Of a stretch of 64,000 bases of DNA, positions 6,449 to 62,610 are shown piece by piece (positions within the stretch are counted from its first letter, which is position 1; the number at the start of each line of letters is the position of its first letter). The stretch lies in contig NC_086110.1 of the NCBI RefSeq assembly GCF_963921235.1, positions 9,424,001 to 9,488,000 on the forward strand, given 5' to 3'. The notes under the pieces are model-generated. The model worked only from the letters and a program-made list of their open reading frames with translations, searched no databases and was not told where the DNA came from. Both the position numbers and the translations under genes were made by a program. The stretch is from Mobula hypostoma (Eukaryota).

Positions 6449-6648
6449 CTCACAAGGTTCAAACGAAGTCCTGTTCACGGTGTAGTGAACCAATAATAGC
6501 AAAGTCTAAAGAAAGAAAGAAACAGGATCCAGGAAAAAAGAGCATAGAGATGACACCAAGGAACCCAAGTAGAACAGAAAATGCTACAAATGCCTCGGCA
6601 AAGGTCAAGAAACATCACAAAAAAAGAAGTGAACCAATGAGTATCTGA
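6449..6648 (+). CDS. candidate terminal exon of the same unidentified gene (Lys-rich, HKVQTKSCSRCSEP...KKRSEPMSI*)
   Basis: Acceptor tattttacttgcag|, phase-1 open frame to TGA at 6648, and overlapping ATTAAA/AATAAA at 6653-6662. Confidence 0.4.
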
Positions 6649-28654: not shown

Positions 28655-31600
28655 TATAAGACCAATAGATATAGGAGCAGAAGGAGGTCATTCGGCCCAT
28701 CGAGTGCTCTGCCATTCAGTCATGGGCTGATCCAATTCTTCCAGTCCCCTGCTTTCTCCCCATACCCTTTGATGCCCTAGCTAATCAGGAAGCTATCTAT
28801 CTCTGCCTTAAACGCACTCAGTGACCTGGCTTCCACAGCCATTTGTGGCAACAAATTTGACAGGTTTACCCCCCTCTGCTAAAGTAATTTCACCACATCT
28901 CATTTCTAAATGGACATCCTTTGATCCCGAAGTCATGCCCTCTTGACCTAGACTCCCCTACCATGGGAAATAGCTTTGCCATATCTTATCTGTTCAGGCC
29001 TTTTAATATTCAGAATGTTTCTATGAGAGCCCCCCCACCCCATTCTCCTGTCAGTCCAAGAGTTGTCAGGCGTTCCTCATACGGTAACCCTTTCATTCTT
29101 GTGAATCTTCTCTTAACCCTCTCCAATGTCAGTATATCCTTTCTAAAATTAGGAGCGCAAAACTGCACACAATACTCCGTGTAGTCTCACGAGTGCCTTA
29201 TAGAGCCTCAATATCATATCCCTGCTCTTATATTCCGTATCTCCAGAAACGAATGCCGACATTGCATTTGCCTTCTTCAGCACCGACTCAACCATTTAGG
29301 GTATTGTGCACAAGAACTCCCAAGTCCCTTTGAATCTCTGAATTTTGAATTCTCTCCCCATCTAAATAAAAGACTGCCCATTTATTTCTTCTACCAAAGT
29401 GCGTGACTATACACTTTCCAATATTGTATTCCATTTGCCAATTTGCCACTTTTTGCCCATTCCCTATCCACGTCTCTCTGTAGGCTCTCTGTTTCCTCAA
29501 CAATACCCGCTCCTCCACCTATCTTTGTATCATCGACAAATTAAGCCTCAAATCCATTAATTCCATAGATATACATTGTAAAAAGCAGTGATCCCAACAT
29601 TAACACATGTGGAACTCCACTGGAACAGCAGCCAGCCAGAATAAGATCCCTTTATTCCCACTCTCTGTTTTCTGCCGATCAGCCAATGCTCCACCCATAC
29701 TAGAAACTTCCCTATAATTCCATGGGCTCTTATCTTGCTAAACATAGAAACATAGAAAATAGGTGCAGGAGTAGGCCATTTGGCCCTTCAAGTCTGCACC
29801 GCCATTCAGTATGATCATGGCTGATCATCCAACTCAGAACCCTGTACCAGCCTTTCCTCCATACCCCCTGATCCCTTTAGCCACAAGGGCCATTTCTAAC
29901 TCCCTCTTAAATATAGTCAATGAACTGGCCTCAACTGCTTCCTGTGTCAGAGAATTCCACAGATTCACCACTCGCTGTGTGAAGAAGTTTTTCCTAATCT
30001 CGGTCCTAAAAGGCTTCCCCTTTATCCTCAAACTGTGACCCCTCGTTCTGGACTTTCCCAACATCGAGAACAATCTTCCTGCATCTAGCCTGTCCAATCC
30101 CTTTAGGATTTTATATGTTTCAATAAGATCCCCCCTCAATCTTCTAAATTCCAGAGAGTATAAGCCTAGTCGATATTCAGTCTTTCATCATATGAAAGTC
30201 CTGCCATCCCAGGAATCAACCTGGTGAACATTCTTTGTACTTCCTCTATGGCAAGGATGTCTTTCCTCAGATTAGGGGACCAAAAGTGCACACAATACTC
30301 CAGGTGTGGTCTCACCAAGGCCTTGTACAACTGCAGTAGTACCTCCCTGCTCCTGTACTCGAATCATCTTGCTATGAATGCCAGCATACCATTCGCTTTT
30401 TTCACCATCTGCTGTACCCGCATGCACACTTTCAATGACTGGTGTATAATGACACCCAGGTCTCGTTGCACCTCCCCTTTTCCTAATCGGCCACCATTCA
30501 GATAATAATCTGTTTTCCTGTTTTTGCCACCAAAGTGGATAACCTCACATTTATCCACATTAAGTTGCATCTGCCATGAATTTGCCCACTCACCTAGCCT
30601 ATCTAAGTCACCCTGCATCCTCTTAGCATCCTCCTAACAGCTAACGCTGCCACCCAGCTTCGTGTTATCCGCAAACTTGGAGATGCTGCATTTAATTCCC
30701 TCATCTAAGTCATCAATATATATTGTAAACAACTGGGGTCCCAGCACTGAGCCTTGCGGTACCCCACTAGTCACTGCTTGCCATTCTGAAAAGGTCCCGT
30801 TTATTCCCACTCTTTGCTTCCTGTCTGCCAACCAATTCTCTATCCACGTCAATACCTTACCCCCCAATACCGTGTGCTTTAAGTTTGCACACTAATCTCC
30901 TGTGTGGGACCTTGTCAAAAGCCTTCTGAAAATCCAAATATACCACATCCACTGGTTCTCCCCTATCCACTCTACTAGTTACATCCTCAAAAATTCTTTG
31001 ATTCATCAGACATGATTTTCCTTTCCTAAATCCATGCTGACTTTGTCCGATTATTTCACCGCTTTCCAAATGTGCTGTTATCACATCTTTGATAACTGAC
31101 TCTAGCATTTTCCCCACCACCGATGTTAGGCTAACCGGTCTATAATTCCCCGGTTTCTTTCTCCCTCCTTTTTTAAAAAGCAGGGTTACATTAGCCACCC
31201 TCCAGTCCTCAAAAGCAGCCTCAAGTGCGGCACCCTGTCAAAGGCCTTCTGCAACCCCAAGTACACCACATCCACTACATCTCCTTTGTCTACCCTGCTT
31301 GTAATTTCTTTAAAAAAAAACGCAGTGGGTTAGTCAGGCAGGATTTTTCTTTCAGGAAACATTGTTGGCTTTGGCCTATCTTGTCATGTGTCTCCAGGTA
31401 CTCCACAATCTCATCCCTAACAACTGATTCCAACAACCTCCCAACCACTGATGTCAGGCTAGCAGGTCCATAGTTTCCTTTCTGCTGCCTCCCACCCTTC
31501 ATAAATAGCAGAGTAATATTTGCAATTTTCCAGTCATCTGCTACAATGCCAGAACCTATCGATTTTTGAAAGATCATTGTTAATGCTGCAACAGTCTCTC

Positions 31601-34409: not shown

Positions 34410-35820
34410 TTGTATGGAAGAAGAAGTCTTCAGTGTCCTGCCTCAATGACTACCGTCCCAATGCACTCACATCCATCATCATAAAGTGTTTCGAGATGCT
34501 CGTCATGAGGCACATCAAAACCCTGTGCCCCCCTCAATGGACCCCCTGCAGTTTGCATATCATCCCAACCACTCAACAGAGGACACCATCGCCACCACCC
34601 TCCACCTGGCCCTCACCCACCTGGACAAAAAAACACATACGTTCGTATGCTGTTCATAGACTTCAGTTCAGCATTCAACACAATCATTCCTCAACACCAG
34701 ATTGGAAAGCTGAATCTGCTGGGCCTGAACACCTCCCTCTGCAACTGGATCCTAGACTTCCTGACTGGGAGACCTCAGTCAGTCCAGATGGGGAGCAGCA
34801 TCTCCAGCACCATCACAGTGAGCACGGGGGCCCCCCAGGGCTGTGTGCTCAGTCCACTGTTGTTCACTCTGCTGACCCACGACTGTGCTACAACACACAG
34901 CTCGAACCACATCATCAAGTTCGCCGATGACACGACCGTGGTGGGTCTCATCAGCAAGAACGACGAGTCAGCATACAGAGAGGAGGTACAGTGGCTAACG
35001 GACTGGTGCAGAGCCAACAACCTATCTCTGAATGTGAACAAAACAAAAGAGGTGGTTGTTGACTTCAGGAGAGCACGGAGCGACCACGCTCAGCTGAACA
35101 TTGACGACTCCTCCATTGAGATCGTTAAGAGCACCAAATTTCCTGGTGTTCACCTGGTGGAGAATCTCACCTGGTCCCTCAACACCAGTTCCATAGACAA
35201 GAAAGCTCAGCAGCGTCTCTACTTTCTGCGAAGGCTGAAAGAAGTCTATCTCACACCCCCCATCCTCACCACATCATACAGAGGATGTTTTGAGAGCATC
35301 CTGAGCAGTTGCATCACTACCTGGTTCGGGAATTGCATCGTCTCGGATCGCAAGACCCTGCAGCGGATAGTGAGGTCAGCTGAGAAGATTATCGGTGTCT
35401 CTCTTCCCACCATTACAGACATTTACACCACACGCTGCACCCGTAAAGCCAACAGCATTGTGAAGGACCCCACGCACCCCTCATACAAACTCTTCCTCCT
35501 TTTGCCATCTGGCAAAAGGTACCGTAGAATTCGGGCTGTCACAACCAGACTGTGCAACAGTTTCTTCCCCAAGCCATCAGACTCCTTAGTACCCAGTGTC
35601 CACACTGACATCTATATCATTTATTATTATATTGTAATTCGTCCTCTACTGTGCCTATTGTCTTGTTTATTATTTACTGTGCTTCCTGCACTGTTTTTTG
35701 CACTTTATGTAGTCCTGTGTAGGTCTGTAGTCTAGTGTAGTTTTTGTGTTGTCTTACATAGTCTAGTGTAGCCTTGAGTTGTCTCACTTAGTCTAATGTA
35801 GTTTGTGTTGTTTCATATAG
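34410..35820 (+). mobile_element. Rex1/Babar-type LINE, 5'-truncated; RT ORF 34647-35735
   Basis: [36 protein letters not shown] and [10 protein letters not shown] motifs. There is a frameshift upstream of 34647 and no endonuclease. Confidence 0.9.
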
Positions 35821-37057: not shown

Positions 37058-40000
37058 AAACATAGAAACATAGAAAACCTACAGCAGAACATGTCCCTAC
37101 CTTAGAAATTACGAGGGTACCCACAGCTCTCTATCTTAATAAGCTCCATGTACCTATCCAAAAGTCTCTTAAAAGACCCTATCGTATTCGCCTCCACCAC
37201 CGTTGCCTGCAGCCCATTCCATACACTCAACACTCTCTGCGTGAAAAACATACCACTCACATCTCCTCTCTACCTACTCTCCAGCACCTTAAACCTGTGC
37301 CCTCTTCTTGTAACCAATTCAGCCCTGGGAAAAAGCGTCTGACTATCCACAAGATCAATGCCTCTTACACAGCTCTATCACGTCACCTCTCATCTTCCGT
37401 CGCTCCAAGGAGAAAAAGCCGAGCTCATTCAACACGTTTTCATAAGGCATGCTCCCCAATCCAGGCAACGTCCTTGTAAATTTCTGCACCCTTCCTATGG
37501 TTTCCATATCCTTCCTGTAGTGAGAGAACCAGAACTGAGCACAGTACTCCAAGTGGGGTCTGACCAAGGTTCTATATAGCTGCAACATTACCTCTCGGCT
37601 CCTAGATTCAATTCCACGATTGATGAAGGCCGTTTGCCTTCTTAACCACAGAGTTAACCTGCGCAGCTGCTTTGAGTGTCCTATGGACTCGGGCCACAAG
37701 ATCCCTCTGATCCTCCACACTGCCAAGAATCTGACCATTAATACAATATTCTGTCGTCAGATTTGACCTACCGAAATGAACCACTTCACACTTATCTGGG
37801 TTGAACTCCATCTGCCACTTCTCACCCATGTTTGAAATCCTATCAATGTCCCTCTGTAACCTCTGACAGCCCTCTACACTATCCATAACACCCCCAACTT
37901 TTGTGTCATCAGGAAAGTTACTAATCCATCTCTCCACTTCCTCATCCAGGTCAATTATAAAAATCACGAAGAGTAAGGGTGTAAGGCTGGTCATCGATCT
38001 CCATGCAGAATATGACCCGTCTACAACCACTGTCTGCCTTCTGTGGGCAAGCCAGTTCTAGATCCACAAAACAATGTCCCCTTGGATCCTATGCCTCCTT
38101 ACATTCTCAATAAGCCTTGCATGGGGTACCTTATCAAATGCCTTGCTTAAATCCTTATACCCTACATCTACTGCTCTTCCTTCATCAATGTTTTCAGTCA
38201 CATCCTCAAAAAATTCAATCAGGCTTGTAAGGCACGTCCTGCCCTTGACAAACATGCTGTCTATTCCTAATCCTATTATACCTTTCCAAATGTTCATAAA
38301 TCCTGCCTCTCAGGATCTTCTCTATGAATTTACAAACCACTAAAGTAAGATTCACTGGACTATAATTTCCTGCGCTATCTCTACTCTCTTTCTTGAAAAA
38401 GGGAACAACATCCACAACCCTCCAGTCCTCCGGCACCTCTTCCGTTCTCATTGATGATGCAAAGATCATCCTCAGATGCTCAGCAATCTCCCCCCTCGCC
38501 TCCCACAATAGCCTAGGTTACATCTCATCCGGTCCCGGCGACTTATCCAACTTGAATCTTTCCCAAAGCTCCAGCACATCCTCTTTCTTAATATCTACAT
38601 GTTCAAGCTTTTCAGTCCGCTGCAAGTCATCACTACAATCACCGAGACCCTTTTCCACAGTGAATATTAAAGTAAAGTATTTATTAAGTACTTCTGCTAT
38701 TTCCTCCGGTTCCATACACACTTTCCCACTGTCACACTTGCTAGGTCCTATTCTTTCACGTCTTATCCTCTTACTCTGTACATATTTGTAGAATGCCTTG
38801 GGGTCTTCCTTAATCCTGCCCGCCAAGACCTTCTCATGGCCCGTTCTGGCTCTCCTAATTTCCTTCTTAAGCTCCTTCCTGTTAGCCTTATAATCTTCTA
38901 GATCTCTAACTTTACTTAGCTCTGTGAACCTTTTGTAAGCTTTTATTTTCCTCTTGCCTAGATTTACTACAACCTTTGTACACCATAGTTCCTGTACTCT
39001 ACCATAACTTCCCTGTCTCATTGGAACATACCGAAGCAGAACTCCACACAATTTTCCCTGAACATTTGCCACATTTCTTCCATACCTTTCCCTGAGAACA
39101 CCTGTTCCCAATTTAATCTTCCAAGTTCCTGCCTGATAGTCTCAAACTTCCCCTTACTCCAATTAAACGCTTTTCTAACTTGTCTGTTTTTATCTCTCTC
39201 CAATACTCTTGTAAAGGAGATAGAATTATGATCACTATCTCCAAAATGCTCTCCTACTGAGAGATCTGACACCTGACCAGGTTCATTTCCCAATACGAAA
39301 TCAAGCACTGTCTCTGCTCTTGTACGCTTATCTACATATTGTGTGAAGAAACCTTCGTGAACAGAGCTAACAAACTCTACCCCATTTAGGGAGATGCCAG
39401 TCGATATTTGAAAAATTAAAATCTCCCACCACGACATCTCTGTGATTATTACTCCTTTCCTGGGTCTGTTTCCCTATCTGCTCCTCGATATCCCTGTTAC
39501 TATTGGGCGGCCTATAAAAACACCCAGTAGAATTATTGACCGTTTCCTGTTCCTAACTTCCACCCACAGCGACTCCGTAGACAATCCATCCATGACGTCC
39601 ACCTTTTCTGCAGCCGTGACACTATTTCTGATCAACAGTGCCACGCCCCCACCTCTTTTGCCTCCCTCCCTGTTGTTTCCGAAACATCTAAGACCCAACA
39701 CATGAGGTAGCCATTCCTGTCCCTGAGCCATCCAAGTCTCTGTAACGTCCACCATATCATATCTCCAAGTACTGATCCGCGCTCTAAGCTCATCCGCTTT
39801 GTTCACAATACTCCTTGCGTTAAAATTGACATATCTCAAACCGTCGGTCTGAGAGCGTCCCTTCTCTATCACCTGCCCATCCTCCCTCACACACGGTCTC
39901 CAAGCTTTCTCTATTTGTGAACTAACCGCCTCTTCCTCAGTCTCTTCAGTTCTGCTTCCATCCCCCATCAATTCAAGTTTAAACTCTCCACAGTAGCCTT

Positions 40001-41025
40001 TGCAAACCTCCCCGCCAGGATATTGGTTCCCCTGGGATTCCGTGCAATCCGTCCTTTTTGTACACACACACCTGCCCCCAAAGAGGTCCCAATGATCCAG
40101 AAATCTGAATCCCTGTCTCCTGCTCCAATCCCTCGGCCACGCATTTATCCTCCACGTCATTCTATTCCTATACTCACTGTCAAGTGCAACAGACTGTAAT
40201 CCCGAGATTACTACTTTTGCGGTCCTGCTTCTCAACTTCCTTCCTAACTCCCTGTAGTCTGTTTTCAGGACCCCTTCCCTTTTCCTACCTATGTCATTGG
40301 TACCAATATGTACCACGACCTCTGGTCGTTCTCCCTTTCACTGCAGGATGTCGTGGACGCGAACTGAAACATTTCGGACCCTGGCACCTGGGAGGAAAAC
40401 TATCACCCGAGTTTCTTTCCTGCGTCCACTGAATCACCTGTCTGGCCCCTTCTGAGCCACAGGGCCGGACTCTGTGCCAGAGACACGATCACTGTTGCTG
40501 CCCCCAAGTAGGCTGTCCCCCCCCAACAGTATTCAAACAGGAGTACTTATTGTTCAGGGGGACAGCTACAGGGGTACTCTCTTGTACCTGACTCTTCCCC
40601 TTCCCTCTCCTGACTGTTACCCACTTGTCTGTCTCCCGTGGCCCCGGTGTGACCACCTGTTTATAACTCCTTTCTATCACCTCCTCGATCTCCCTGACTA
40701 GACGAAGGTCATCGAACTGCAACTCCAGTTCCCTAACGCAGTCCCTTAGGAGCTGTAGCTCGACACACCGGGAGCAGATATGTTTGTCCGGGACGCTGTG
40801 AGACTCCAGGATTTCCCACATCTGACAACGAGCACAGAACACCGGCCTCACACACATACTTCCTTTCCGCAATTGACACAGGTAAACGTACCTCGCCTCG
40901 TCCTGTTACAGCCTAAGTCCGTTGAGCGAAATCCCTATTACTCTGCTACCCTCTCACTCCGCTGCCCGCCGGAAATGGAGGTCTTCTTTTTAAACTTTTC
41001 CCGCTCTACTGGCTGACGTCACGCG
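37058..41025 (-). mobile_element. near full-length degenerate CR1 LINE
   Basis: ORF1 zinc finger 40489-40872, esterase 39474-40316 (VHIGTND, GFRFLDHW), endonuclease 39018-39437, RT 37355-38508 and an AAACATAG tail at about 37058. Confidence 0.92.
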
Positions 41026-47189: not shown

Positions 47190-48640
47190 AGTATTTGGAC
47201 TGGATAGCATCCATAGATGTGTCATTAGATCCTATGCACATCTACTGTTGGTCTATTAACATATGCCTCTCCCTGTTTCGACCTGCGGTTCCTACCTGTT
47301 TTAAGACCACGATAAACCCGGTACCAAAGCAACACGTGATAAGGTGCCTCAAGGAGTACCGCCCATTGGCTCTGACATCTACCTTCACGAAGTGCGTGGT
47401 CATTACATCCATCAACTGCAGGCTCCAAGGCATTCTGGGCTCATTGCAGTTCGCTTGCCGCCGAAACAGGACTACATCCTGGCCTTACATTCGTCTCTGA
47501 AACATCTGAATAGTGAAGTCTCATATGTCAGCTATTGTTTATTGTCGGCATTTACACCTTCAAGAGTATAATTCTAAGCAAATTGATCATCAAACTCAGG
47601 ACCCTGCGTAGTAATGCTACGGGATATTGAACTTCCTAACGAACAGACTGCAATCAGTAAGAAGAGGCAGAATCAATTCCGCCAGGATTGATTTAAACAC
47701 TCGTGCTCCTCTGGGTTACATCCCCAGCCCTTTAATCTACTCTCTATACACTCGCGCTCGCCTGGCAGAGGTTTTTTCTATGTCAACAAGTCTCTAAACG
47801 ATACCACCACCATAGTGGGCAGTATCTCAAATAAAGATGAGTTGATGTACAGGAAGGAGATAGAGTGCCATGGTAACAGCCTTTCCTTCAATGTCAGCAA
47901 AACAAAAGAGCTGGTCATTGATTTCATGAAGGGGTCAATGCACATGCTGCTGTCTACCTCAATGTGTTGAGGTTGAGAGGGTTGAGAGCTTCCAGTTCCT
48001 GGCCCAATCACGTTAATGTCACGGCCAAGGAGGTTCGCACACACCTCTGCTTCCTCAGAAGGTTAAAGAAATTTGCTATGACCCCCAACCCTACCCACCC
48101 AATCCCAACCAATTTCACTGAGCACCACAGAGGACATCCTGCCTGGATGCATAAACATTCGGCGCATGAACTACAAGAAGCTGCGGAGAGTCGTGGACAC
48201 AGCCGAGTCCATCGCGGACACAAGCCCCCCCTCCCCCTCCCCCACGTGGACTCAGTTGTAAAGTTTATTGCCTCATTAAAGCAGCTAGCATAATCAAAGA
48301 CTCCACCCACGCAAACATTCTCCCTTCTCTCCTTTTCCACCACGAAGAAGATTCAAAAACCTGACGGCACGCACCGCCAGGTTCAAGGGCAGCTTCTGTC
48401 CCGCTGTTATGACTATTTAATGGTCCTCCAGCACGATAAGGTGCATTTCTGATCTTACAATCTATCTCGTTGTGATATTGTAACCGAATTGTTTATCCGC
48501 ACTGTATTTTCTCTGTACCTGTTGCATTTTATTCTGCATTTTGTTATTGCTGTACCTTGCACTATCCCAATGCACTGTGTAATAATTTGATCTTTATGTC
48601 TGCAACGCAATCTTTCGGTGCATGTGATAATATACATCAA
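47190..48640 (+). mobile_element. old Rex1/Babar-type LINE RT to 3' end
   Basis: YRPLALTS, SKTKELVIDF and HLCFLRRLKKF remnants, with many disruptions. Confidence 0.75.
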
Positions 48641-49299
48641 ATTGGAATTCATCGAGCTCAACTTAATTGCGTGTATTTCTTCTTGGAGAAAACTATGCAG
48701 GGAAGAGTTCTGATAGCTATTGGAATCATTTGACATGTTTGCTTTGGAGGGAAGTACAAAATCAGATCATTTGTGGATTATGGAGAAATGTACTTATCCA
48801 AAGAGTGATAAGAACAGGAAAATACTGGAAACATCTGACGGGGGCATAATAAAAGTATCCGAGGGAAACAGAAATAAAAATGTCACGAGAAATGCTTACG
48901 AATGTTGGGAGTATAAAAAGTAAACGAAAGTCTTCTTATATTCTATCTGTGCCAGAAAGCTATATACATAGAATTGCTATTAATAAGTATTTATTAATAT
49001 TGTTATATTACATATTAATTATGTATATATTGTTGTATAACAGATTTCATTGAATTGTTAAGTAATTGCCAAGAACAACACTGCAAAAATACTTAGTGGA
49101 AAGTTTTCTTTTAATGTTTGTTGATTGCATGGTAAATATTGGATGGTCGTTAGGGATAAGCTATGCTCTTTTTTCGCTATGCTACATGTGAGAGCAGGTA
49201 AACCTTAGTTAAATAGCTTTCCTTGAGCACAAAGGCAAATGCTATATATAATTTTCCATATTCTGTTACATTAATGTTCTACAGAAAGGAAGTACATCC

Positions 49300-49583
49300 G
49301 GGAACCTTCCTGACTGCTATCTGGGAAACGCTACCACAGCATTAAAGCCAGGACCAACAGTTTCCGGGACAGCTTCTTCCACCACGCAATCAGACTGATT
49401 GATTCACGCAGACTCAATTGCATTTCTAAGCTATAATGAGTATTCTTTTGTATATCTTACTCTACATACTATTTATAACAAATTTCTATAATTTGCACAT
49501 TGTACATCCAGACGGAGATGCAACGTAAAGATTTTTACTCCTCAAGTATGTGAAAGATGCAAGAAATAAAGTCAATTCAATTC
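49300..49583 (+). mobile_element. Rex1/Babar-type LINE extreme 3' end
   Basis: gggaaacgctaccacagcattaaagccaggaccaac... followed by aataaagtc(aattc)n. Confidence 0.65.
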
Positions 49584-49596
49584 AATACATGTTGTT

Positions 49597-50897
49597 GCAA
49601 ACAACAGGAATTCTGCAGATGCTGGAAATTCAAGCAACATACATCAAAGTTGCTGGTGAACGCAGCAGGCCAAGCAGCATCTATAAGAAGAGGCGCAGTC
49701 GACGTTTCAGGCCGAGACCCTTCGTCAGGACTAACTGAAGGAAGAGTGAGTAAGGGATTTGAAAGCTGGAGGGGGAGGGGGAGATCCAAAATGATAGGAG
49801 AAGACAGGAGGGGGAGGGATAGAGCCGAGAGCTGGACAGGTGATAGGCAAAAGGGGATACGAGAGGATCATGGGACAGGAGGTCCGGGAAGAAAGACGGG
49901 GGGGGGGGTGACCCAGAGGATGGGCAAGAGGTATATTCAGAGGGACAGAGGGAGAAAAAGGAGAGTGAGAGAAAGAATGTGTGCATAAAAATGAGTAACA
50001 GATGGGGTACGAGGGGGAGGTGGGGCCTTAGTGGAAGTTAGAGAAGTCAATGTTCATGCCATCAGGTTGGAGGCTACCCAGACGGAATATAAGGTGTTGT
50101 TCCTCCAACCTGAGTGTGGCTTCATCTTTACAGTAGAGGAGGCCGTGGATAGACATGTCAGAATGGGAATGAGATGTGGAATTAAAATGTGTGGCCACTG
50201 GGAGATCCTGCTTTCTCTGGCGGACAGAGCGTAGATGTTCAGCAAAGCGGTCTCCCAGTCTGCGTCGGGTCTCACCAATATATAAAAGGCCACATCGGGA
50301 GCACCGGACGCAGTATATCACCCCAGTCGACTCACAGGTGAAGTGATGCCTCACCTGGAAGGACTGTTTGGGGCCCTGAATCGTGGTAAGGGAGGAAGTG
50401 TAAGGGCATGTGTAGCACTTGTTCCGCTTACACGGATAAGTGCCAGGAGGGATATCAGTGGGGAGGGATGGGGGGGGACGAATGGACAAGGGAGTTGTGT
50501 AGGGAGCGATCCCTGCGGAATGCGGGGGGGGAGGGAGGGAAAGATGTGCTTAGTGGTGGGATCCCGTTGGAGGTGGCGGAAGTTACGGAGAATAATATGT
50601 TGGACCTGGAGGCTGGTGGGGTGGTAGGTGAGGACCAGGGGAACCCTATTCCTAGTGGGGTGGTGGAGGATGGAGTGAGAGCAGATGTACGTGAAATGGG
50701 GGAGATGCGTTTAAGAGCAGAGTTGATAGTGGAGGAAGGGAAGCCCCTTTCTTTAAAAAATGAAGACATCTCCCTCGTCCTAGAATGAAAAGCCTCATCC
50801 TGAGAGCAGATGCGGCGGAGACGGAGGAATTGCGAGAAGGGGATGGCGTTTTTGCAAGAGACAGGGTGAGAAGAGGAATAGTCCAGATAGCTGTGAG
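49597..50897 (-). mobile_element. Penelope-like element, 5'-truncated (RT thumb, GIY-YIG endonuclease, tail) with 12-bp TSD
   Basis: YLDYSSSHP...IPFSQFLRLRRIC; ORF 50028-50489 with VIYCVRCSRCGLLYIGETRRRLGDRFAEH. TSD ATACATGTTGTT at 49585-49596 and 50898-50909. Confidence 0.93.
49697..49732 (-). ncRNA. minimal type I hammerhead ribozyme motif in Penelope tail
   Basis: The reverse complement is AGUC-CUGACGA-AGGGUCUCGGCCU-GAAA-C-GUC-GACU, identical to 9385-9420. Confidence 0.75.
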
Positions 50898-52066
50898 ATA
50901 CATGTTGTTATTCAATTCGCATATAGATAATGCTAATAGCTTGCTTTATTTCTTAATAGCTGGTACTACCCGTGACTCATGCATTGGGACACCCAGAAGC
51001 TTCCACATCTCAAAGTTCTGCATTTTGTGATTTTGTGTTTCATATTAAAAATATATATATCCTAACTTAATAAATTCAGTAAGTTCAGAGTTACATTATA
51101 CTGTAGCTGGCCCATTCTTTGGTAATTCTTTGGTATCCTATTGTCCTCTTCTAAACTTGTTTTCTTACATAGTTGGTGTCAATACTAGTTTTAACAATAC
51201 ATGCGATCATGTATGTCATTTATATAAATTAGAAAGCATTAGGGCCCCAGCACATAACTATCAGGCACACTATCTTGCAAATCATAAAACACAACCATTC
51301 TTGCATGCAATCTACGTCCAGTTACTCAGCCAATCTGGATCCTAAGGGCTGTGTTTGACAAATTTGTCTGTGTGACATCCTTCTGTTATAATAATTCTAT
51401 GTATTTGTAATGGTTGCTTTGTGTACGCATATAGAAGTATGATAGCTGCAATAAAATATTTTCATGCTGCTTTTATCTGTTAACATTGTTAACCTAACAG
51501 GTAGACATTTGCAAATGGATGTCCCAAGTTTTCCTGTATGCAGATCGTAGTGAACTTCTATTTTAACCTTCTTTCTTTATAATACCTCTCAGGCAGAAGT
51601 GTGTTTATTTATCATTTTGTTTTATTTAGTGAAAGGAGCCCTTAGTTTGTTAAATAAATCTGAAATATTTCATCGTCTATCTCTAGTTCATCATTGAGTT
51701 TATCAGAGATGGAATATTTTTGGTGCCCCAAAAACAATTCCATTAAACAGTTGTAATGTTTTATCAAGGAGGCATTACTAAAGAATATCGAAGAACCGCA
51801 TGAAATTAGATTGCTGTTTTCTTAAGCCCTGGTCATCTGAGTTAACAGGCAGTTAATTATGTTTAAATTATAGCACCGTAGTCACCCATCAATGACAACA
51901 AAAGCTGAATTCATCTCGTAGAAGTAAACAGAAATTTCGAAGCATTGCACATGACGTGGGGATAGAACCTGAATCTATTCAAGTCCGATTGAAATGCATT
52001 GGTTGTAATTATTTTGTATATTTAGCCATAACTACCTCATGCGTGCAGAATAAAAAGCAAACTTAC

Positions 52067-52111
52067 ATATGCAGTGCCAACTCACTATTGTGTCGTTAGC
52101 TCCAACAAAAT
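52067..52111 (-). CDS. possible second cytoplasmic micro-exon of the IgSF receptor
   Basis: Acceptor gttcgctcacag|, 45 nt open in phase 1, donor |gtaagt. There is an alternative internal donor |gtgagt after ...NDTI. Confidence 0.25.
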
Positions 52112-52630
52112 CTGTGAGCGAACATTTGAAGTTTCTTTGCAGAGCTTGAAATGACAGTGAAATCTTGCCATGGATATAGTCAGATAATTGTTGCTGAATC
52201 AAGAATTTAAATTAATGCCGCACTCTCAAAAAGATAACGTAGTGGAGAAAATTTCCAAGTTTAGTTTCTAAATATTTGCCGAAGGAGTAGCTGTTTCTCT
52301 TGGGTAAGTTAGTTAGGGAAAATGCTATAACTGTCAATTATGCCAGGTTTTGTCTTCTAATGCCATTTAAGTAAGTTGTCCAGTTGTACAGACTCAACGG
52401 GCTTCTGGAAAATAAACGGGAGAGCGGACTTCTGGCTATCCGGCTACAAGTATTCATTTTTCAGATAGTCAGCGGAGTTGCTTACAGTGGTGTTAGGCAG
52501 GTTGATGTCGGGTATGTTGCTACTCCGGACACAGTGAACACACCAGAGCTGGAAGAATCGCTTTGGTGCCATCTTCTGCGTCAGTGTTGTTGCCCTAATG
52601 TGATTTAGTTAGGGAACAACGTAAACTTAC

Positions 52631-52681
52631 ACAAACACAAGCGGACAACATATATCGAATTGTTTACTTCTTCGTTTATTT
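52631..52681 (-). CDS. possible cytoplasmic micro-exon of the IgSF receptor (EINEEVNNSIYVVRLCL)
   Basis: Strong acceptor ttttgcttttctgtcag|, 51 nt, phase 1-1 and open, with donor |gtaagt. Confidence 0.4.
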
Positions 52682-53123
52682 CTGACAGAAAAGCAAAATT
52701 TGAAAACTTCTCGGAAAATGACGTAAGATGTCATGCATTATCTAAGACAAATGTCAATTTAGATTGATTGAGTAATCTAAACGAATCAAATATTTCGTAA
52801 CCTGATATTATTCTTCCCGTCGGATCATCTGGTGACGATCAGTGGAGTACTACTGCTGGTTGAAAATTGTAAATAACTTGTCTACTCTGCCTTCAAAGGT
52901 TCAGTGTTTTTATACCATAAGACCATAAGAAATATTTTCTGCCTATCTTTAAATAAATCTAATTGTAATAGAGCGAGTGAAATCAGATATATAATTCATT
53001 ACAAATCCGCTCAACTTAAGATATATACTGCACTTCCGGAGTACAGATGATGAACATAAACAGCTACTAGAGTTCAATCTGCATTCAAACAAAATTGCGT
53101 GTTAAACTGAAAGGGTACTTTAC

Positions 53124-53246
53124 CTCTACAGTTGATGAACCTGAACGGGATTCTGGTAATGACCATTAGAAGAAAAAATGTCAATGCAAACCCTATGCAT
53201 CCAAAAACCTTTAAATAAAAATTAATCGAAGTCCAGGCGTCTCGAT
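53124..53246 (-). CDS. IgSF receptor transmembrane exon (DRDAWTSINFYLKVFGCIGFALTFFLLMVITRIPFRFINCR)
   Basis: Acceptor tatactatccttccag|, donor |gtaaag, 123 nt, phase 1-1 and in frame with the C1 exon. It encodes a hydrophobic segment of about 22 aa containing one Lys. Confidence 0.8.
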
Positions 53247-53579
53247 CTGGAAGGATAGTATAAAATTCACATTTGAAATTGTCAACAAACCTCTTACTAG
53301 ACTTAGTAACTATCTGAATTTGCTGAAAATACATTCATCACCGTTTAACTATGTAAAAAAGGGGAAGGGCGATGAACGAGACAATTCCGTACAGTGGAAA
53401 ACAGCTAAGACAGTTTAATGTCATTGAAATTTACCAATTAGTATTTACCAGTTTCCTCTGACTGTACTAGGCAAGCCAACTTCTATTCCCATGTATTAAA
53501 AGTCAAATGTCCCCCATTGTCGAATTATTGCACTCGTAGACTGCTGATTGACGCTGGTTTGCCAAGAAATATATCTTAC

Positions 53580-53876
53580 CTGGATTGGAATTAGGAACCA
53601 AATAAACTGCGATGGCTGGAATTTTCAGAGTTATGTGAGCTGCCAGACAGGTGTAAACAGTACCGCTCTGGGCAAGCTGTGCGTCATGAAGAGTACTAGA
53701 AGCTTCATACATGCCGGCGCTGTTGAGCCGTTGAGTGGTATTTATTCCATTCGAAATGGTTTTGTTATTTTTATACCAAACAATAGTCACTCCTGCCGGG
53801 TAAAATGGAGCCATATTACAGAAGAGAGTTGATGGCTCTCTTCTATTTCTAAGAATTTGCAGAGGAGTTGGTGAAG
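53580..53876 (-). CDS. IgSF receptor C1-set domain exon
   Basis: Acceptor aatttttcatcag|, donor |gtaaga, 297 nt, phase 1-1. It encodes LFCNMAPFYPAGVTIVWYKN...GMYEASSTL...YTCLAAH, with the C1 hallmarks C-x4-FYP, W, G-x-Y-x3-S-x-L and Y-x-C-x3-H. Confidence 0.9.
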
Positions 53877-55516
53877 CTGATGAAAAATTAAGGATAATTA
53901 TAAGTTTACATTAAAAATTGGATTTTAAAACAACACCCCGAACCCAAGCAGCTTTTCCATTTTAAACCTGCAGCATTATAATCAGAGAGCAATAAACCAG
54001 TTACGAATGAAATGGCCATGTTACATTTTAAGTAGTGAAAATTACAGTTCATGGAATTGCAAAAAAGAGGGTCGCTACCGAATATCTGTCTAATTAAATC
54101 GCATATCTTATTTCTTCAACTTACAAAAGTTGCCAACTTTTTATGTAAATCTCAGCTAAATGTTAGCAATGAACGTAATTCTCACGTTTTCCAGTGCACT
54201 TTGGATCTCAACAATTACACGTGTTTTCCCTACCAGTTCCCGTATCTTCTGATCCCCTGAATAGAACATAGAAGGACTAATTCCGGAACCAACAGTATCA
54301 CAGTATGTAAAAAAAAACTCCTCTCTGCAACAATAGGACATGGGGCTTTAGGACTTCCGTGATAAGTTGTGAAGATACGCTCACACCTGCGGATCGTCAG
54401 AAATAGAATATATCATCAATTTCCATCCACGAGAATAGATTGAAATATATTCAGGAATCTACATTGTTAGGGGAAAAAAATCTTCATTTTCCAGAATAGC
54501 TCCAGCTGCGAGAGCCATTCTTAGCTGGTTGGAAGGATGGAAATTACACGTGATGATACTCATATTTGAGCAAATCAGATGAGAACTCAATAAGTAGGAT
54601 TCCCATCTGGGGTTACACTAAGCTGTGCATTTGTGACTAGAAAGGCAGCTGGCATCAGACACAGATCGGTCAATATAAGCCAGAGTGTTTTGGCCAAGGC
54701 ACAGATGCAGCACTCTTCTTTCCCAAGTTTTGAGCTCTCAGCCAAATCTTGCGGTTTGAACATATGCAAGAGTAAATCTTTAGTGCACACTCCAGAATTG
54801 TTGCAAATTCGAAGGTGGGGTCGAAGTCAGGAGATGCTAATGTGATATTCTACGTCTGCCTCTTCTAGTGCACTTGAAATAAACAAAAGCATGGCATTTG
54901 CTATGGTGCCTTAGGCAATAATTCTGAGTCAAGTAACAATATTAGAGCTTTGAAGATCATCTCATAGTCTCGTATACGCCTTGCTGAATCTATTTTCCCT
55001 TTACTGTTTTCCAAATTCACAGAAATATGTACCTTTCAATAACTGCTAAGTGTTGTCAAGCGCAAGCAATAATAAAACGCATTATGTTTCTGCAAATCGC
55101 ATCAAGATTTGGCATACACTTCATGGAAAATCATTTCGGAGAAATGCTTGGACGCATATTCCTTTAGCGGGAGATTCGTAGTTCAGATGGTCAGGATTAT
55201 GAATATTGAAACAATTTAATAATCGGCATTAATAAGTAATAGGAAAAGGCTATGTAATTGCAGAACCTGCATTCCCCCTAATCTGGCACGTAAAATACTC
55301 TTCTGTATGCTTACGAGAGAAAATAAAGTTAAACATCAAAGCACTGAAACATGTTAATAGCCAAGGAAGTGAATCTACAAGTGTTTTCGATATCAATTTA
55401 TGGAAAAGAGGACTTTGTTTCCTGATGTAAATATTAAAGCAAGGCACAGCCCACGTGTACGGGGTTGGATTATCACATCTAGATCGCAAATGATCTGAAC
55501 TTTATCTGAATCTTAC

Positions 55517-55831
55517 CAATGACAACAAGCTGTGATCCACTGCCATTTGCCACATTTAATCCTCTGAACTTGATTCCGCAGTGATAGACTCCAGAGTCGG
55601 AGATACTGATATTCAGGAGCTGGAGTGAGACCTTTTCTTCCCCAATGTCAATATATTTCCTGCTATCTGGTTGAATGAGCTCTACTTCGCCAAGTTTCCA
55701 CCAGTAAATGTTGACTTTTGACATTTCTTCGGAGTTGGAAATTGTGCAGCTGAAAATGACATTTTCACCAACGAATGATCTGGTACGTTCGGGGGTTTGG
55801 ACTACTTGAAATACCTCGTCGGCAGCAGCTA
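55517..55831 (-). CDS. IgSF receptor V-set exon with germline-joined J-like G strand (NCR3/NKp30-like)
   Basis: Acceptor gttcgttttcag|, donor |gtaaga, 315 nt, phase 1-1. It encodes VVQTP...FSC...YWW...LQLLNISISDSGVYHC...NGSGSQLVV. Confidence 0.92.
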
Positions 55832-55963
55832 CTGAAAACGAACATGAATTATTATTACAAAACACAAAGTAAGATTTAGAATGAGAAATAGAGATACAGA
55901 AAGAAATATAAAACGAACTGAAGGAAACTACGGTGAAAATAATCCCCACGAGTTGGTTACTAC

Positions 55964-56024
55964 CGAGCGCAGCGAAAAAATACATGTCAGTGATCGATAC
56001 AGTTATCTTGAAGGCATCAAACAT
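55964..56024 (-). CDS. probable leader exon of the IgSF receptor (MFDAFKITVSITDMYFFAAL)
   Basis: ATG at 56024, 61 nt ending at a phase-1 donor G|gtagta, with a 132-bp intron to the V exon. The donor is weak and hydrophobicity is only moderate. Confidence 0.4.
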
Positions 56025-59469: not shown

Positions 59470-62400
59470 ATCCTAACAATTGGAGGAGATGGCAATTGAA
59501 TGCATGGCTGAGAATTGGTGCAGGGAGCAGGGTTTTAGATTTTTGGATCATTGGGATCTCTTTTGGGGAAGGTGGGACCTGTACAGATTGGATGGGTTGC
59601 ACCTGAACTCGAGGGAGAGCAATATCCTTGCGGGTAGGTTCGCTGGCATGGTTCGGGAGGGTTTAAAATAATTTGCAAGGGGGATGGGACCCAGAGCGAT
59701 AGAGCAGTGAAAGAAGTGCATGGAGTAAAGCCAGATCTAACATACAGAGAGGCTTTGAGGAAAGAGAAGCAGAATAAACGGTGTACAGACAGTAACGTTG
59801 AAGGGCTGAAATGTGTGTACCTCAATGCAAGAAGCATCAGGAACAAAGGTGATGAACTCAGAGTTTGGATACACATGGAATTATGATGTATTGGCCATGA
59901 CAGAGACTTGGCTGGCACCAGGGCAGGAACGGATTCTCAATATTCCTGGATTTCAGTGCTTTAAAAGGGATAGAGAGGGCGGAAAAGGGGAGGAGGGGTG
60001 GCATTACTGGTCAGGGATACTATTACAGCTACAGAAAGGGTAGGTAAATAGCAGGATCCTCTTTTGAGTCAGTATGGGTGGAAGTCAGGAATAGGAAGGG
60101 AGCGGTTACTCTATTGGGAGTATTCTATAGGCCCCCTGGTAGCAGCAGAGATACAGAGGAGCAGATTGGGAGGCAGATTTTGGAAAGGTGCAAAAATAAC
60201 AGGGTTGTTATCATGGGTGACTTTAACTTCCCTAATATTGATTGGCACCTGATTAGTTCCAAGGGTTTAGAAGGGGCAGAGTTTGGTCAGTATGTCCAGG
60301 ACAGATTCCTGTCATGGTATGTGGACAGGCCGACTAAGGGGAATGCCATACTAGATGTAGTACTAGGTAATGAACCGGGTCAGGTCACAGATCTCTCAGT
60401 GGGTGAGCATCTGGGGACAGTGATCTCCGCTCCCTAGCCTTCTGCATTATGGAAAAGGATAGAACCAGAGAGGACAGGAACATTTTTAATTGGGGAAGGG
60501 CAAATTATGAGGCTATAAGGCTAGAAGTTGCGAGTGTGAATTGGGATGATGTTTTTGCAGGGAAATGTACTATGGACATGTGGTCGATGTCTGCAAATCT
60601 CTTGCAGGATGTTAGGGATAAATTTGTCCCGGTGAGGAAGGTAAAGAATGGTAGGGTGAAGGAACCATGGATGCCAAATGAGGTGGAAAATCTAGTCAGG
60701 TGGTAGAAGGCAGCATACATGAGGTTTAGGAAGCAAGAATCAGATGGGTCTATTGAGGAATATAGGGAAGCAAGAAAGGAGCTTAAGAAGGGGCTGAGAA
60801 GAGCAAGAAGGGGGCAAGAGAAGGCCATGGCGAGTAGGGTAAAGGAAAACCCCAAGGCATTCTTCAATTATGTGAAGAAAAAAAGGATGACAGGACTGAA
60901 GGTAGGACCGATTGGAGATAAAGGTGGGAAGATGTGCCTGGAGGCTGTGGAAGTCAGCGAGGTCCTCAATGAATACTTCTCTTCGGTATTCACCAATGAG
61001 AGGGAACTTGATGATGGTGAGGACAATATGAGTGAGGTTGATGTTCTAGAGCACGTTGATATTAAGGAAGAGAAGATGTTGGAGTTGTTAAAATACATTA
61101 GGACGGATAAGTCCCCGGGGCCTGATGGAATATTCCCCAGGCTGCTCCACGAGGTGAGGGAAGAGATTGCTGAGCATCTGGCTAGGATCTCTACGTCCTC
61201 GTTGTCCACGGGAATGGTACCGGAGGATTGAAGGGAGGCGAATGTTGTCCTCTTGTTCAAAAAAGGTCGTAGGGATAGTCCGGGTAATTATTGACCAGTG
61301 AGCTTTACGTCTGTGGTGGGAGAGCTGTTGGAAAAGAGTCTCAGAGATAAGATCTCTGGGCATTTAGAGAAGTATGGTCTGATCAGGGACAGTCAGCATG
61401 GCTTTGTGAAGAGCAGATCATGTCTAACAAGCCTGACAGAGTTCTTTGAGGAGGTGACCAGGCATGTAGATGAGGGTAGTGCAGTGGATGTGATCTATAT
61501 GGATTTTAGTAAGGCATTTGACAAGGTTCCACACGGTAGGCTTGTTCAGAAAGTCAGAAGGCATGGGCTCTAGGGAAGTTTGGCCAGGTGGATTCAGAAT
61601 TGGCTTTCCTGCAGAAGGAAGAGGGTCGTGGTGGAAGGAGTACATTCAGGTTGGAGGATTGTGACTAGAGGTGTCCCACGAGGATCTGTTCCGGGACCTC
61701 TACTTTTCGTGATTTTGTATTAAGGACCTTGCTGTAGAGGTAGAAGGGTGGGTTCGCAAGTTTGCAGACGACACAAAGGTTGGTGGTGTTGTAGATAGTG
61801 TAAAAGATTGTCAACGACTGCAGAGAGACATTGATAGGATGCAGAAGTGGGCTGAGAAGTGGCAGATGGAGTTCAGCCCGGCGAAGTGTGAGGTGGTACT
61901 TTTTGGAAGGACAAGCTCCAAGGCAGAGTACAAAGTAAATGGCAGGATACTTGGTAGTGTGGAGGAGCAGAGAGATCTGGGAGTACATGTCCACAGATCC
62001 CTGAAAGTTGCCTCACAGGTGGATAGGGTAGTTAAGAAAGCTTATGGGGTGTTAGCTTTTATAAGTCGAGGGATAGAGTTTAAGAGTTGCGATGTAATGA
62101 TGCAGCTCTATAAAACTCTGGTTAGACCACACTTGGATTACCGTGTCCAGTTCTGGTAGCCTCACTATAGGAAGGATGTTGAAGCATTGGAAAGGGGTCA
62201 GAGGAGATTTACCAGGATGCTACCAGGTTTAGAGTGTATGCATTATGATCAAAGATTAAGGGAGTTAGGGCTTTACTCTTTGGAGAGAAGGAGGATGAGA
62301 GGAGACATGATAGAGGTGTACAAGATAATAAGAGGAATAGATAGAGTGGATAGCCAGCGCCTCTTCCCCAGGGGACCACTGCTCAATACAAGAAGACATG

Positions 62401-62610
62401 GCTTTAAGGTAAGGGGTGGGAAGTTCAAGGGGATATTCGAGGAATATTTTTTACTCAGAGAGTGGTTGGTGCGTGGAATTCACTGCCTGAGTCAGTGGTG
62501 GAGCCAGATACACTAGTGAAGTTTAAGAGACTACTAGAAAGGTATATGGAGGAAATTAAGATGGGGGCTTATATGGGAGGCAGGGTTTGAGGGTCGGCAC
62601 AACATTGTGG
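59470..62610 (+). mobile_element. CR1 LINE, ORF1 esterase to 3' end, degenerate
   Basis: ORFs 59480-59671, 60078-60437 (GDFNFP), 60719-61231, 61298-61573, 61839-62159 and 62187-62516. Confidence 0.92.

What the first reader, a model, noticed from the sequence alone, without database searches (positions are those of the whole stretch)
53124..56024. Non-rearranging VJ-C1-TM immune receptor with antigen-receptor architecture
Seen in sequence: three in-frame phase-1 GT-AG exons splice to a V domain ending in a J-like G-x-G-S-x-L-x-V strand, a canonical C1 domain and a TM. The J-like strand is already joined, with no intron or RSS between V and J. Established knowledge: C1-set domains are typical of Ig, TCR, MHC, tapasin and SIRP. 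Germline-joined VJ domains characterise NCR3/NKp30, which in mammals lacks a C1 domain. VJ-C1 non-rearranging genes have been proposed as relics of the pre-RAG antigen-receptor ancestor. Inference: this is a chondrichthyan NCR3-family or proto-antigen-receptor-like gene, possibly of an uncharacterised subtype and possibly MHC-linked.
Basis: partly seen in the sequence, partly recalled or inferred. Interest (0 to 1): 0.8.

Follow-up and report, generated by a model that had tools for sequence, protein, structure and literature searches.

The report
Ray germline VJ-C1 activating receptor gene
This is a real, intact devil-ray gene for a cell-surface immune receptor built like one chain of an antibody or T-cell receptor but fixed in the germline. 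It is an "on-switch"-type member of a large, unnamed shark-and-ray gene family, and it is neither a close relative of NKp30 nor, in the species I could check, on the MHC chromosome.

Summary
On the minus strand, V (55831-55517), C1 (53876-53580) and TM (53246-53124) exons are all phase 1 and GT-AG. The V domain ends in a joined J-like strand (NGSGSQLVV) and there is no RSS.

- The true start is ATG 55985, not 56024.
- An 87-nt leader intron.
- A fifth exon, 47505-47441.

The five-exon splice equals RefSeq XP_062923440.1, "tapasin-related protein-like" of Mobula hypostoma.

The gene belongs to a large multigene family. Every member I could name is chondrichthyan, and automatic names are inconsistent (tapasin-related, NCR3LG1-like, SIRP-alpha-like, Ig-lambda-like). 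Members carry either ITIM tails or a basic TM residue with a short tail. This gene has Lys239 and no tyrosine motif. It sits in a well-supported orthologue group spanning rays and sharks.

The NCR3 reading is not supported. NKp30 ranks 28th among V-domain structural matches. True NCR3 genes lie in the sawfish and white-shark MHC, while this gene's sawfish orthologue and white-shark family members lie on other chromosomes.

No reference-rooted phylogeny against SIRP or PRARP could be run. This scan has met the same family before on other DNA of this genome.

The parts
55919..55985 (-). Leader exon: ATG 55985, 22 codons plus 1 base, hydrophobic signal peptide, donor A|GTTCGT
   Evidence: Matches RefSeq isoform X3 (P0009) and the Hypanus orthologue P0003.
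55832..55918 (-). Intron 1, 87 nt, GT-AG, stop-free and in frame. Retained in RefSeq isoforms X1/X2. The acceptor is a NAGNAG (cag|tag) that gives isoform X4.
55517..55831 (-). VJ exon, phase 1 at both ends. V-set domain with Cys51, Trp66 and Cys107, an 11-residue CDR3-like loop and a joined J-like strand.
   Evidence: AF2 pLDDT is above 90.
55521..55547 (-). J-like G strand N118-G-S-G-S-Q-L-V-V126. Asn118 sits where canonical J has Phe/Trp and forms an N-G-S sequon.
53580..53876 (-). C1-set exon, phase 1 at both ends. Contains Cys147, FYP, Trp161 and Y-T-C204-L-A-A-H.
53124..53246 (-). Stalk plus transmembrane exon. No stalk cysteine. The TM helix carries Lys239 (codon 53211-53209) 3-4 residues in from the outer face, and a conserved Gly-Cys.
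47441..47505 (-). Terminal coding exon (D-VSETNVRPGCSPVSAASELQ-stop). Acceptor ttcag|AT. Contains no tyrosine.
   Evidence: Unique within the window.
47506..53123 (-). Intron 4, 5.6 kb, carrying transposon copies

Best explanation
Shown: the locus is an intact five-exon gene (RefSeq 'tapasin-related protein-like', Mobula hypostoma). It encodes a 288-aa type I membrane protein made of a signal peptide, one germline-joined VJ-type V domain, one C1 domain, a cysteine-free stalk, a TM helix carrying Lys239 and a 30-odd-residue tail without tyrosine motifs. It belongs to a clustered multigene family of VJ-C1-TM receptors. Every member I could name comes from sharks, rays, skates or chimaera. Some paralogues carry long ITIM tails and others a basic TM residue with a short tail. 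The gene has orthologues in rays and sharks. Inferred: it works as the activating-type member of a paired-receptor family. The V domain binds an unknown ligand through its CDR-like loops, of which the CDR3-like loop is the most variable stretch among paralogues. The C1 domain acts as a spacer. Lys239, near the outer leaflet, recruits an ITAM-bearing adaptor with a TM aspartate (FcR-gamma/CD3-zeta type, or DAP12), as in SIRP-beta, NKp30, NKp46 and activating LILR/KIR.
For: Gene model: the splice equals XP_062923440.1, and RefSeq has five isoform models. Domains: Pfam V-set and C1-set; AF2 model with pLDDT 87, two beta-sandwiches and one TM helix 226-256. Family: the profile search gives about 70 single-stretch V-C1-TM representatives. 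All 37 family-level hits, and all 20 further representatives looked up, are chondrichthyan, and there is a gap from E 6e-73 to 6e-21 after the family. Clustering: members share one chromosome in each of Mobula, Hypanus, Heterodontus, Heptranchias and Chiloscyllium. The last exon of another member lies at window 6447-6648 on the plus strand. Orthology: a clade of 9 with SH-aLRT 99 splits into batoids and sharks. TM residue: K in three rays, R in four sharks, Q in one. Tails: 29 of 61 scorable members have ITIM-like motifs, and 17 have a basic TM residue with a 4-38-residue tail and no ITIM. The CDR3-like region has the highest entropy.
Against: No expression data were examined; RefSeq isoforms are only indirect evidence. 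No adaptor gene was looked for. Lys239 lies near the membrane boundary and could be interfacial. The Mustelus orthologue has Gln there. Two shark orthologues (P0166, P0168) combine the polar or basic TM residue with an LTYA-x-V ITIM tail, so the ancestral gene may not have been purely activating. My crude family-wide association between a basic TM residue and absence of ITIM is not significant (Fisher p=0.12). The ligand is unknown.
Confidence: 0.7

Rival explanations
1. It is a true (divergent) member of the SIRP family: a SIRP-beta-like chain that has one C1 domain instead of two.
For: RefSeq names many paralogues 'tyrosine-protein phosphatase non-receptor type substrate 1-like'. SIRP-beta-1 and SIRP-alpha align with TM 0.57 over V plus C1. 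The nearest language-model clusters include 'SIRBL protein'. The logic is the same: J-like V, C1, ITIM versus TM-Lys pairs.
Against: Foldseek E-values for SIRP (4-7e-14) are no better than for PD-L1, CD276, TAPBPR, B7-H6 or butyrophilins (6e-16 to 3e-14), at only 20-21% identity. SIRP V is absent from the top 30 V-domain matches. There is a single C1. No SIRP reference sequences could be put in a tree.
Confidence: 0.15
2. It is a relic of the pre-RAG antigen-receptor lineage (PRARP/UrIg-like) that pairs with a second VJ-C1 chain as a TCR-like heterodimer, using TM charges to recruit CD3-like modules.
For: It has the VJ-C1-TM architecture with phase-1 exons, and a TM Lys as in TCR chains. The V domain's nearest structural matches are CD79b, CD8-beta, Ig-kappa V and TCR-alpha V. 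The C1 matches Ig C-lambda and UrIg2 C domains. Many paralogues are clustered.
Against: The canonical J Phe/Trp at the V-V interface is replaced by Asn in 58 of 69 members, and that Asn forms an N-G-S/T sequon in 53 of 69. There is no stalk cysteine for an interchain bond. CDR3-like length is fixed at 11 in 52 of 67 members. The family is not on the MHC chromosome in sawfish or white shark, whereas UrIg, NKp30 and PRARP are cited as MHC-linked. The best single-domain C1 match is HLA-DM beta, not an Ig/TCR constant domain.
Confidence: 0.1
3. It is an NCR3/NKp30-family gene, possibly MHC-linked.
For: J-like strand, basic TM residue and short tail, as in NKp30. NKp30 does appear among V-domain matches.
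Against: NKp30 is only rank 28, at 20% identity. A C1 domain is present. Genes annotated NCR3 lie in the MHC class III region of sawfish chr34 and white-shark chr19. The sawfish orthologue LOC127577509 is absent from that chromosome's gene list and sits on a 54-Mb sequence, against about 20 Mb for chr34. No family member carries an NCR3 name.
Confidence: 0.04
4. It is what its automatic names say: a tapasin-related chaperone or a B7-H6/B7-family ligand.
For: The top whole-model Foldseek hits are PD-L1, CD276, TAPBPR and B7-H6 (3pv7, TM 0.66 by target).
Against: TAPBPR aligns only over its residues 195-450, and the N-terminal domain that defines tapasin/TAPBPR is missing. The V domain alone matches receptor-type VJ domains, with no B7-family V domain in the top 30. 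A strongly conserved G-x-G J motif is present. ITIM tails and a basic TM residue fit receptors, not B7 ligands.
Confidence: 0.04
5. It is a germline-joined Ig light-chain or TCR gene.
For: Some paralogues are named 'immunoglobulin lambda-1 light chain-like'. Ig light chains are top PDB Foldseek hits.
Against: It has a TM exon with Lys, no canonical F-G-x-G, and no C-terminal cysteine. It is only 17-23% identical to light chains, and the TM-score is low (0.3-0.45) because of a different V-C geometry. There is no RSS anywhere nearby. Family members carry ITIM tails.
Confidence: 0.02

Closest known systems
SIRP family (SIRP-alpha inhibitory / SIRP-beta activating)
   Same: N-terminal V domain with a J-like G strand followed directly by a C1 domain. 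Paired logic of ITIM tails versus a TM lysine with a short tail. Multigene cluster. Many paralogues are auto-named SIRP-alpha-like.
   Different: One C1 domain instead of two. Only about 20% identity, and no better structural score than other V-C1 families. The lysine sits near the outer leaflet rather than mid-membrane. Orthology is untested.
NKp30 (NCR3)
   Same: Non-rearranging V domain with a G-x-G J-like strand, a basic TM residue and a short tail.
   Different: NKp30 has no C1 domain (established knowledge) and is MHC class III-linked, also in sawfish and white shark. This gene's orthologue is on another chromosome, and its V domain is no closer to NKp30 than to CD79b, CD8-beta, Ig-kappa or TCR-alpha.
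PRARP (Fu et al. 2019, J Immunol 202:1992; cited in PMC10751288)
   Same: [quoted passage not shown]
   Different: PRARP is cited as an MHC-associated VJ gene, while this family is off the MHC chromosome in the species checked.
UrIg / UrIg2 (Flajnik et al. 2023, 2025; PMC12227049)
   Same: Elasmobranch, non-rearranging VJ exon followed by C1 domains. The C1 exon here hits UrIg2 C domains.
   Different: UrIg and UrIg2 have several C1 domains (nurse-shark UrIg2 has nine). UrIg2's N-terminal domains form homodimers, with a C2-C3 structure resembling IgG Fc. UrIg maps to the MHC and UrIg2 to the Ig/TCR complex. Here there is one C1, a TM lysine, a large paired family and a different chromosome.
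TAPBPR and B7-H6/B7 family (source of the RefSeq names)
   Same: V plus C1 plus TM layout and phase-1 exon structure. These are the best whole-model Foldseek E-values.
   Different: It lacks the tapasin N-terminal domain. It has a conserved J-like motif and receptor-type signalling features. The V domain alone does not match B7-family V domains preferentially.

Membership tests
NCR3 / NKp30 | Ectodomain is a single V domain with no C domain | tested here: not met
   A C1-set exon is present (Pfam E 5.2e-12).
NCR3 / NKp30 | V domain specifically closest to NKp30 | tested here: not met
   NCR3 is rank 28, E 2e-7, 20% identity, behind CD79b, CD8-beta, Ig-kappa V, TCR-alpha V and CD7. This is structural ranking only, not a tree.
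NCR3 / NKp30 | Location in the MHC class III region | tested here: not met
   Tested on the orthologue and family members, not in Mobula itself. Sawfish NCR3-like genes are on chr34 at 5.1-5.2 Mb. The chr34 gene list ends at 19.8 Mb and lacks LOC127577509, which lies on a 53.95-Mb sequence. White-shark NCR3 genes are on chr19, whose list ends near 116 Mb, while family members are on a 193.5-Mb sequence.
NCR3 / NKp30 | Basic TM residue with a short signalling-less tail | tested here: met
   Lys239 and a tail without tyrosine.
SIRP | V-C1-C1 ectodomain | tested here: not met
   Only one C1 exon lies between the V and TM exons.
SIRP | Paired inhibitory (ITIM) and activating (TM Lys) members with similar ectodomains | tested here: met
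   For example, near-identical ectodomain pairs P0015/P0053 and P0023/P0025 have different tails.
SIRP | Sequence grouping with SIRP V and C1 domains | tested here: inconclusive
   About 20% identity, and Foldseek E-values are similar to those of other V-C1 families. No reference sequences were available for a tree.
PRARP | Homology to chicken/fish PRARP VJ and C domains | not testable with these tools
   The paper is not held.
Rearranging Ig/TCR chains (including germline-joined IgL) | RSS-flanked V and J segments, or a canonical F/W-G-x-G-T J motif joined in the germline | tested here: not met
   No RSS. Asn replaces Phe/Trp, giving N-G-S-G-S.
Rearranging Ig/TCR chains (including germline-joined IgL) | Cysteine for an interchain disulfide after the C domain | tested here: not met
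   No Cys in the stalk; the only nearby Cys is inside the TM helix.
Tapasin / TAPBPR | N-terminal ~190-residue domain preceding the Ig domains | tested here: not met
   The mature protein starts directly with the V domain. TAPBPR aligns only from its residue 195.
UrIg / UrIg2 | VJ followed by several C1 domains; linked to the MHC or the Ig/TCR complex | tested here: not met
   Single C1. Not on the MHC chromosome in sawfish or white shark. Linkage to the Ig/TCR complex was not tested.
Chondrichthyan VJ-C1-TM paired-receptor family (unnamed) | V with the N-G-T/S-G-S/T-x-L-x-V strand, C1 with Y-T-C-x-V-S-H, one TM, and either an ITIM tail or a basic TM residue | tested here: met

The most novel reading that the evidence does not exclude
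The family is a surviving, expanded side branch of the non-rearranging VJ-C1 gene from which Ig and TCR chains arose (sister to Ig/TCR/UrIg rather than to SIRP or B7). Its activating members, with a TM basic residue, would assemble with CD3-zeta/FcR-gamma-type modules much as TCR chains do. That would give cartilaginous fish a germline-encoded, multigene 'proto-TCR' recognition system outside both the MHC and the Ig/TCR complex.
Probability: 0.07. Interest if true: 0.9.

Novelty: new variant of a known kind. Interest (0 to 1): 0.5.

Why it matters
Searches for single-exon VJ genes drive current work on how the RAG transposon created antigen receptors. The literature I could read names NKp30, PRARP, UrIg and UrIg2 as the non-rearranging relics. 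Here is a large VJ-C1-TM family, found in chimaera, sharks, skates and rays, that is visible in RefSeq only under contradictory automatic names. I found it in no paper I could search.

If placed in proper trees it could do one of two things. It could add a new lineage to the antigen-receptor-origin debate. Or it could show that SIRP-like paired receptors with a single C1 domain go back to the base of jawed vertebrates.

It also offers candidate activating/inhibitory (NK- or myeloid-type) receptors for cartilaginous fish. As far as I know, few such receptor families have been described in that group.

Tried and rejected
ATG 56024 was rejected in favour of 55985. RefSeq models and shark orthologues start there.
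- **Short 'CRDR' isoform (X2).** I searched for its terminal exon. Only three weak candidates turned up (acceptors at 38000, 32012, 28802), none with a good polypyrimidine tract. It remains unlocated.
- **Lost ITIM exon.** I looked downstream of the TM exon using tails of shark orthologues and paralogues. Only chance-level hits appeared.
- **PDB sequence searches with V and C1 profiles.** The tables are dominated by summed scores of multi-Ig chains (titin, antibody heavy chains), so they do not discriminate families.
- **Whole-model Foldseek and ESM-Atlas searches.** All V-C1 families score alike.
- **DNA of orthologous loci for dN/dS and synteny.** The assemblies were too large to be served. 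P0001 itself is not indexed.
- **Further Ig exons in the window.** A family-wide tblastn found only this gene and one terminal exon of the neighbour. Other hits are transposon pieces wrongly built into paralogue models.
- **Basic TM residue versus ITIM.** A 2x2 test was not significant with my crude TM calling.
- **Papers not held.** The PRARP, UrIg-2023 and B7H6/NKp30-2012 papers were unavailable.
Full report
**Observation.**
- The V exon (55831-55517) ends ...ANGSGSQLVVI.
- The C1 exon (53876-53580) carries the FYP and YTCLAAH hallmarks.
- The third exon (53246-53124) encodes a stalk and a hydrophobic helix with one lysine.

Pfam calls V-set (E 1.2e-9) and C1-set (E 5.2e-12). The V-to-J region is continuous. 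The window has no heptamer-spacer-nonamer, and 55400-56000 has no RSS heptamer.

**Gene model.** A search with the V region found a 100% identical RefSeq protein of Mobula hypostoma, 'tapasin-related protein-like'. Its cluster holds five isoforms. Splicing 55985-55919, 55831-55517, 53876-53580, 53246-53124 and 47505-47441 reproduces isoform X3 (P0009, XP_062923440.1, 288 aa) exactly.

- Intron 1 is stop-free and a multiple of three. That explains isoforms X1/X2, which read through it.
- A cag|tag tandem acceptor explains isoform X4.
- The terminal exon of the short 'CRDR' isoform could not be located.

I did not see RNA data. The isoform set is only indirect evidence of transcription.

**Protein.** AlphaFold2 on a 41-sequence family alignment gives pLDDT 87, with two beta-sandwich domains (mostly above 95) and one helix, 226-256. 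Canonical Cys51-Cys107 and Cys147-Cys204 are present. Lys239 lies 3-4 residues inside the outer end of the TM segment. The tail has no tyrosine. The stalk has no cysteine.

**Family.** A profile of six relatives was searched against 1.84 billion representatives. It returned 3475 hits at E below 1e-3 and 124 below 1e-30. Among them are about 70 single-stretch proteins of 220-450 aa that cover V, C1 and TM; the rest are giant multi-Ig proteins.

A second, name-bearing search with a 41-member profile gave 37 family-level hits (E at or below 6e-73). All are from sharks, rays, skates, sawfish, sawshark or the chimaera Callorhinchus. The next hit drops to E 6e-21. Twenty further representatives looked up by exact sequence were also all chondrichthyan.

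Their automatic names conflict: tapasin-related, tapasin-like, NCR3 ligand 1-like, CD276 homologue, SIRP-alpha-like, Ig lambda-1 light chain-like, uncharacterized.

Within each species the members share one chromosome-sized sequence, and in Heterodontus, Heptranchias and Mobula their accession numbers run close together. Inside this window, 6447-6648 on the plus strand is the last coding exon of another member. It is 87.5% identical to the tail of Hemitrygon P0076 and Hypanus P0162, and it runs convergently towards our gene.

**Orthology.** In a likelihood tree of 79 ectodomains the window protein falls in a clade of nine with SH-aLRT 99.
- One branch holds Hypanus (86% identity) and Pristis (70%).
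- The other holds Heterodontus, Cetorhinus, Mustelus and two Scyliorhinus species.
- A Chiloscyllium protein is also in the clade.

The split mirrors the ray-shark split, so I take this to be one old gene kept intact in both lineages.

The polar TM position is K in the three rays, R in four sharks and Q in Mustelus. Two shark orthologues also carry an LTYA-x-V ITIM tail. No trace of such an exon was found in this window.

**Signalling types.** Of 61 members with a scorable TM:

| Class | Members |
|---|---|
| ITIM-like tail (70-150 residues) | 29 |
| Basic residue in the outer TM half, short tail (4-38 residues), no ITIM | 17 |
| Neither | 15 |

Nine of the 29 ITIM-tailed members also carry a basic TM residue. 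Near-identical ectodomains with opposite tails occur, for example P0015/P0053 and P0023/P0025. This is the pattern of paired activating and inhibitory receptors. My crude 2x2 test of it is not significant (p=0.12), and related sequences are not independent.

**J-like strand.** Across the family the motif is N-G-T/S-G-S/T-x-L-x-V.
- The residue before the first glycine is Phe or Trp in canonical J. Here it is Asn in 58 of 69 members.
- In 53 of 69 that Asn forms an N-G-S/T sequon.
- The CDR3-like loop is 11 residues long in 52 of 67 members, and it is the most variable stretch among paralogues.

By established knowledge, the J phenylalanine packs in the VL-VH or V-alpha-V-beta interface. A probable glycan there, together with the missing stalk cysteine, argues against Ig/TCR-style chain pairing. 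This is inference.

**Comparison with known families.** The whole model hits every V-C1 family about equally, at 15-23% identity:

| Match | Foldseek result |
|---|---|
| PD-L1 | E 6e-16 |
| CD276, TAPBPR (from its residue 195 only) | E 1e-15 |
| B7-H6 | TM 0.66 by target |
| Butyrophilins, Skint | E about 7e-15 to 5e-14 |
| SIRP-alpha/beta | TM 0.57 |
| Ig lambda | E about 5e-14 |

The C1 exon's best single-domain PDB match is HLA-DM beta (38 bits). Per-domain scores are 24 bits for C-lambda and 21 bits for a UrIg2 C domain. The nearest language-model clusters are an unnamed V-C1 cluster and 'SIRBL protein'.

None of this assigns the family to a named one.

**MHC linkage.** The supplement of PMC10751288 lists the genes of three MHC chromosomes.
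- Sawfish chr34 (NC_067438.1) ends at 19.8 Mb. It holds class I, class II, TAP, PSMB8/9 and three 'NCR3-like' genes at 5.1-5.2 Mb next to DDAH2. The sawfish orthologue of our gene, LOC127577509, is not in that list and lies on a 53.95-Mb sequence.
- White-shark chr19 (NC_054485.1) is listed to about 116 Mb, with at least five NCR3 genes at 101.9-102.3 Mb. White-shark family members lie on a 193.5-Mb sequence.
- The catshark MHC is on a sequence labelled chr37, while the catshark orthologue is on a 198.8-Mb sequence. I did not read the size of chr37.

So true NCR3 genes exist and are MHC-linked in these fish, and this family is elsewhere. For Mobula itself this is inference by orthology. Earlier notes of this scan place MHC findings on other pieces of the genome, which I treat as a lead only.

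**Literature.** Searches for PRARP, VJ-C1, shark NKp30 with C1, SIRP in cartilaginous fish, and elasmobranch ITIM multigene families found no description of this family. The papers I could read name NKp30, PRARP, UrIg and UrIg2 as the non-rearranging VJ genes. Subscription papers are not covered, so absence is not proof.

**Verdict.** This is a real, intact, conserved gene. It is the activating-type member of a clustered VJ-C1-TM receptor family known so far only from cartilaginous fish. It works most like SIRP-beta or other paired receptors.
- Membership of NCR3, tapasin/TAPBPR, B7 and IgL/TCR fails tested features.
- Membership of SIRP or PRARP is open.

The same family has been met repeatedly by this scan on other DNA of this genome.

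Noticed in passing
window 6447-6648 (+): Last coding exon (acceptor ...cttgcag|CT, Lys-rich tail ending KKHHKKRSEPMSI-stop) of a neighbouring VJ-C1 family gene. It is 87.5% identical to the tails of Hemitrygon P0076 and Hypanus P0162 (the 'PWWIY' TM subgroup). The gene body lies upstream of the window start. It is convergent with the gene studied, about 41 kb away.
   Followed up: partly
window 55832-55918 (-): The 87-nt leader intron is stop-free and a multiple of three. RefSeq isoforms X1/X2 read through it and put 29 extra residues into the signal-peptide region. These are probably intron-retention products rather than functional proteins. The acceptor is a NAGNAG tandem that gives isoform X4.
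   Followed up: partly
window 50040-50156 (-) and 11988-12104 (+): These stretches match the first 39 residues of the RefSeq model of paralogue P0006 (64% and 49%). They also match each other at the DNA level (86% over 174 nt). This looks like a repeat wrongly built into that gene model's N-terminus.
   Followed up: partly
window 10758-10895, 14012-14164, 30538-30837, 37779-38057 (-) and 61746-62426 (+): Five dispersed stretches match residues ~48-127 or 77-303 of family representative P0027. The repeated matches point to a transposon ORF fused into that model, not to Ig exons.
   Followed up: no
This copy lies inside intron 4 of the receptor gene.
   Followed up: no
window 34647-35732 (+) and 39477-40316 (-): LINE remnants. 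One ORF has reverse transcriptase (RVT_1, E 1e-18). Another has a GDSL-esterase-like part plus an endonuclease (Exo_endo_phos). Much of the stretch from about 9 to 47 kb, between the two receptor genes, contains transposon-derived sequence.
   Followed up: no
window 47441-47505 (-) versus orthologues: The tail encoded by the terminal exon (VSETNVRPGCSPVSAASELQ) has no counterpart in the Hypanus (…CRDR) or Pristis (…CKDL) models, nor in shark orthologues (…RQR.DEAN…, some followed by an ITIM). The cytoplasmic end of this gene seems to change quickly between lineages.
   Followed up: partly
family alignment (A2/A5), TM region; window codons about 53200-53195: A Gly-Cys pair in the outer half of the TM helix (FGC in this gene) recurs in many activating and inhibitory members. 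A conserved intramembrane cysteine is unusual, and I have no explanation for it.
   Followed up: no
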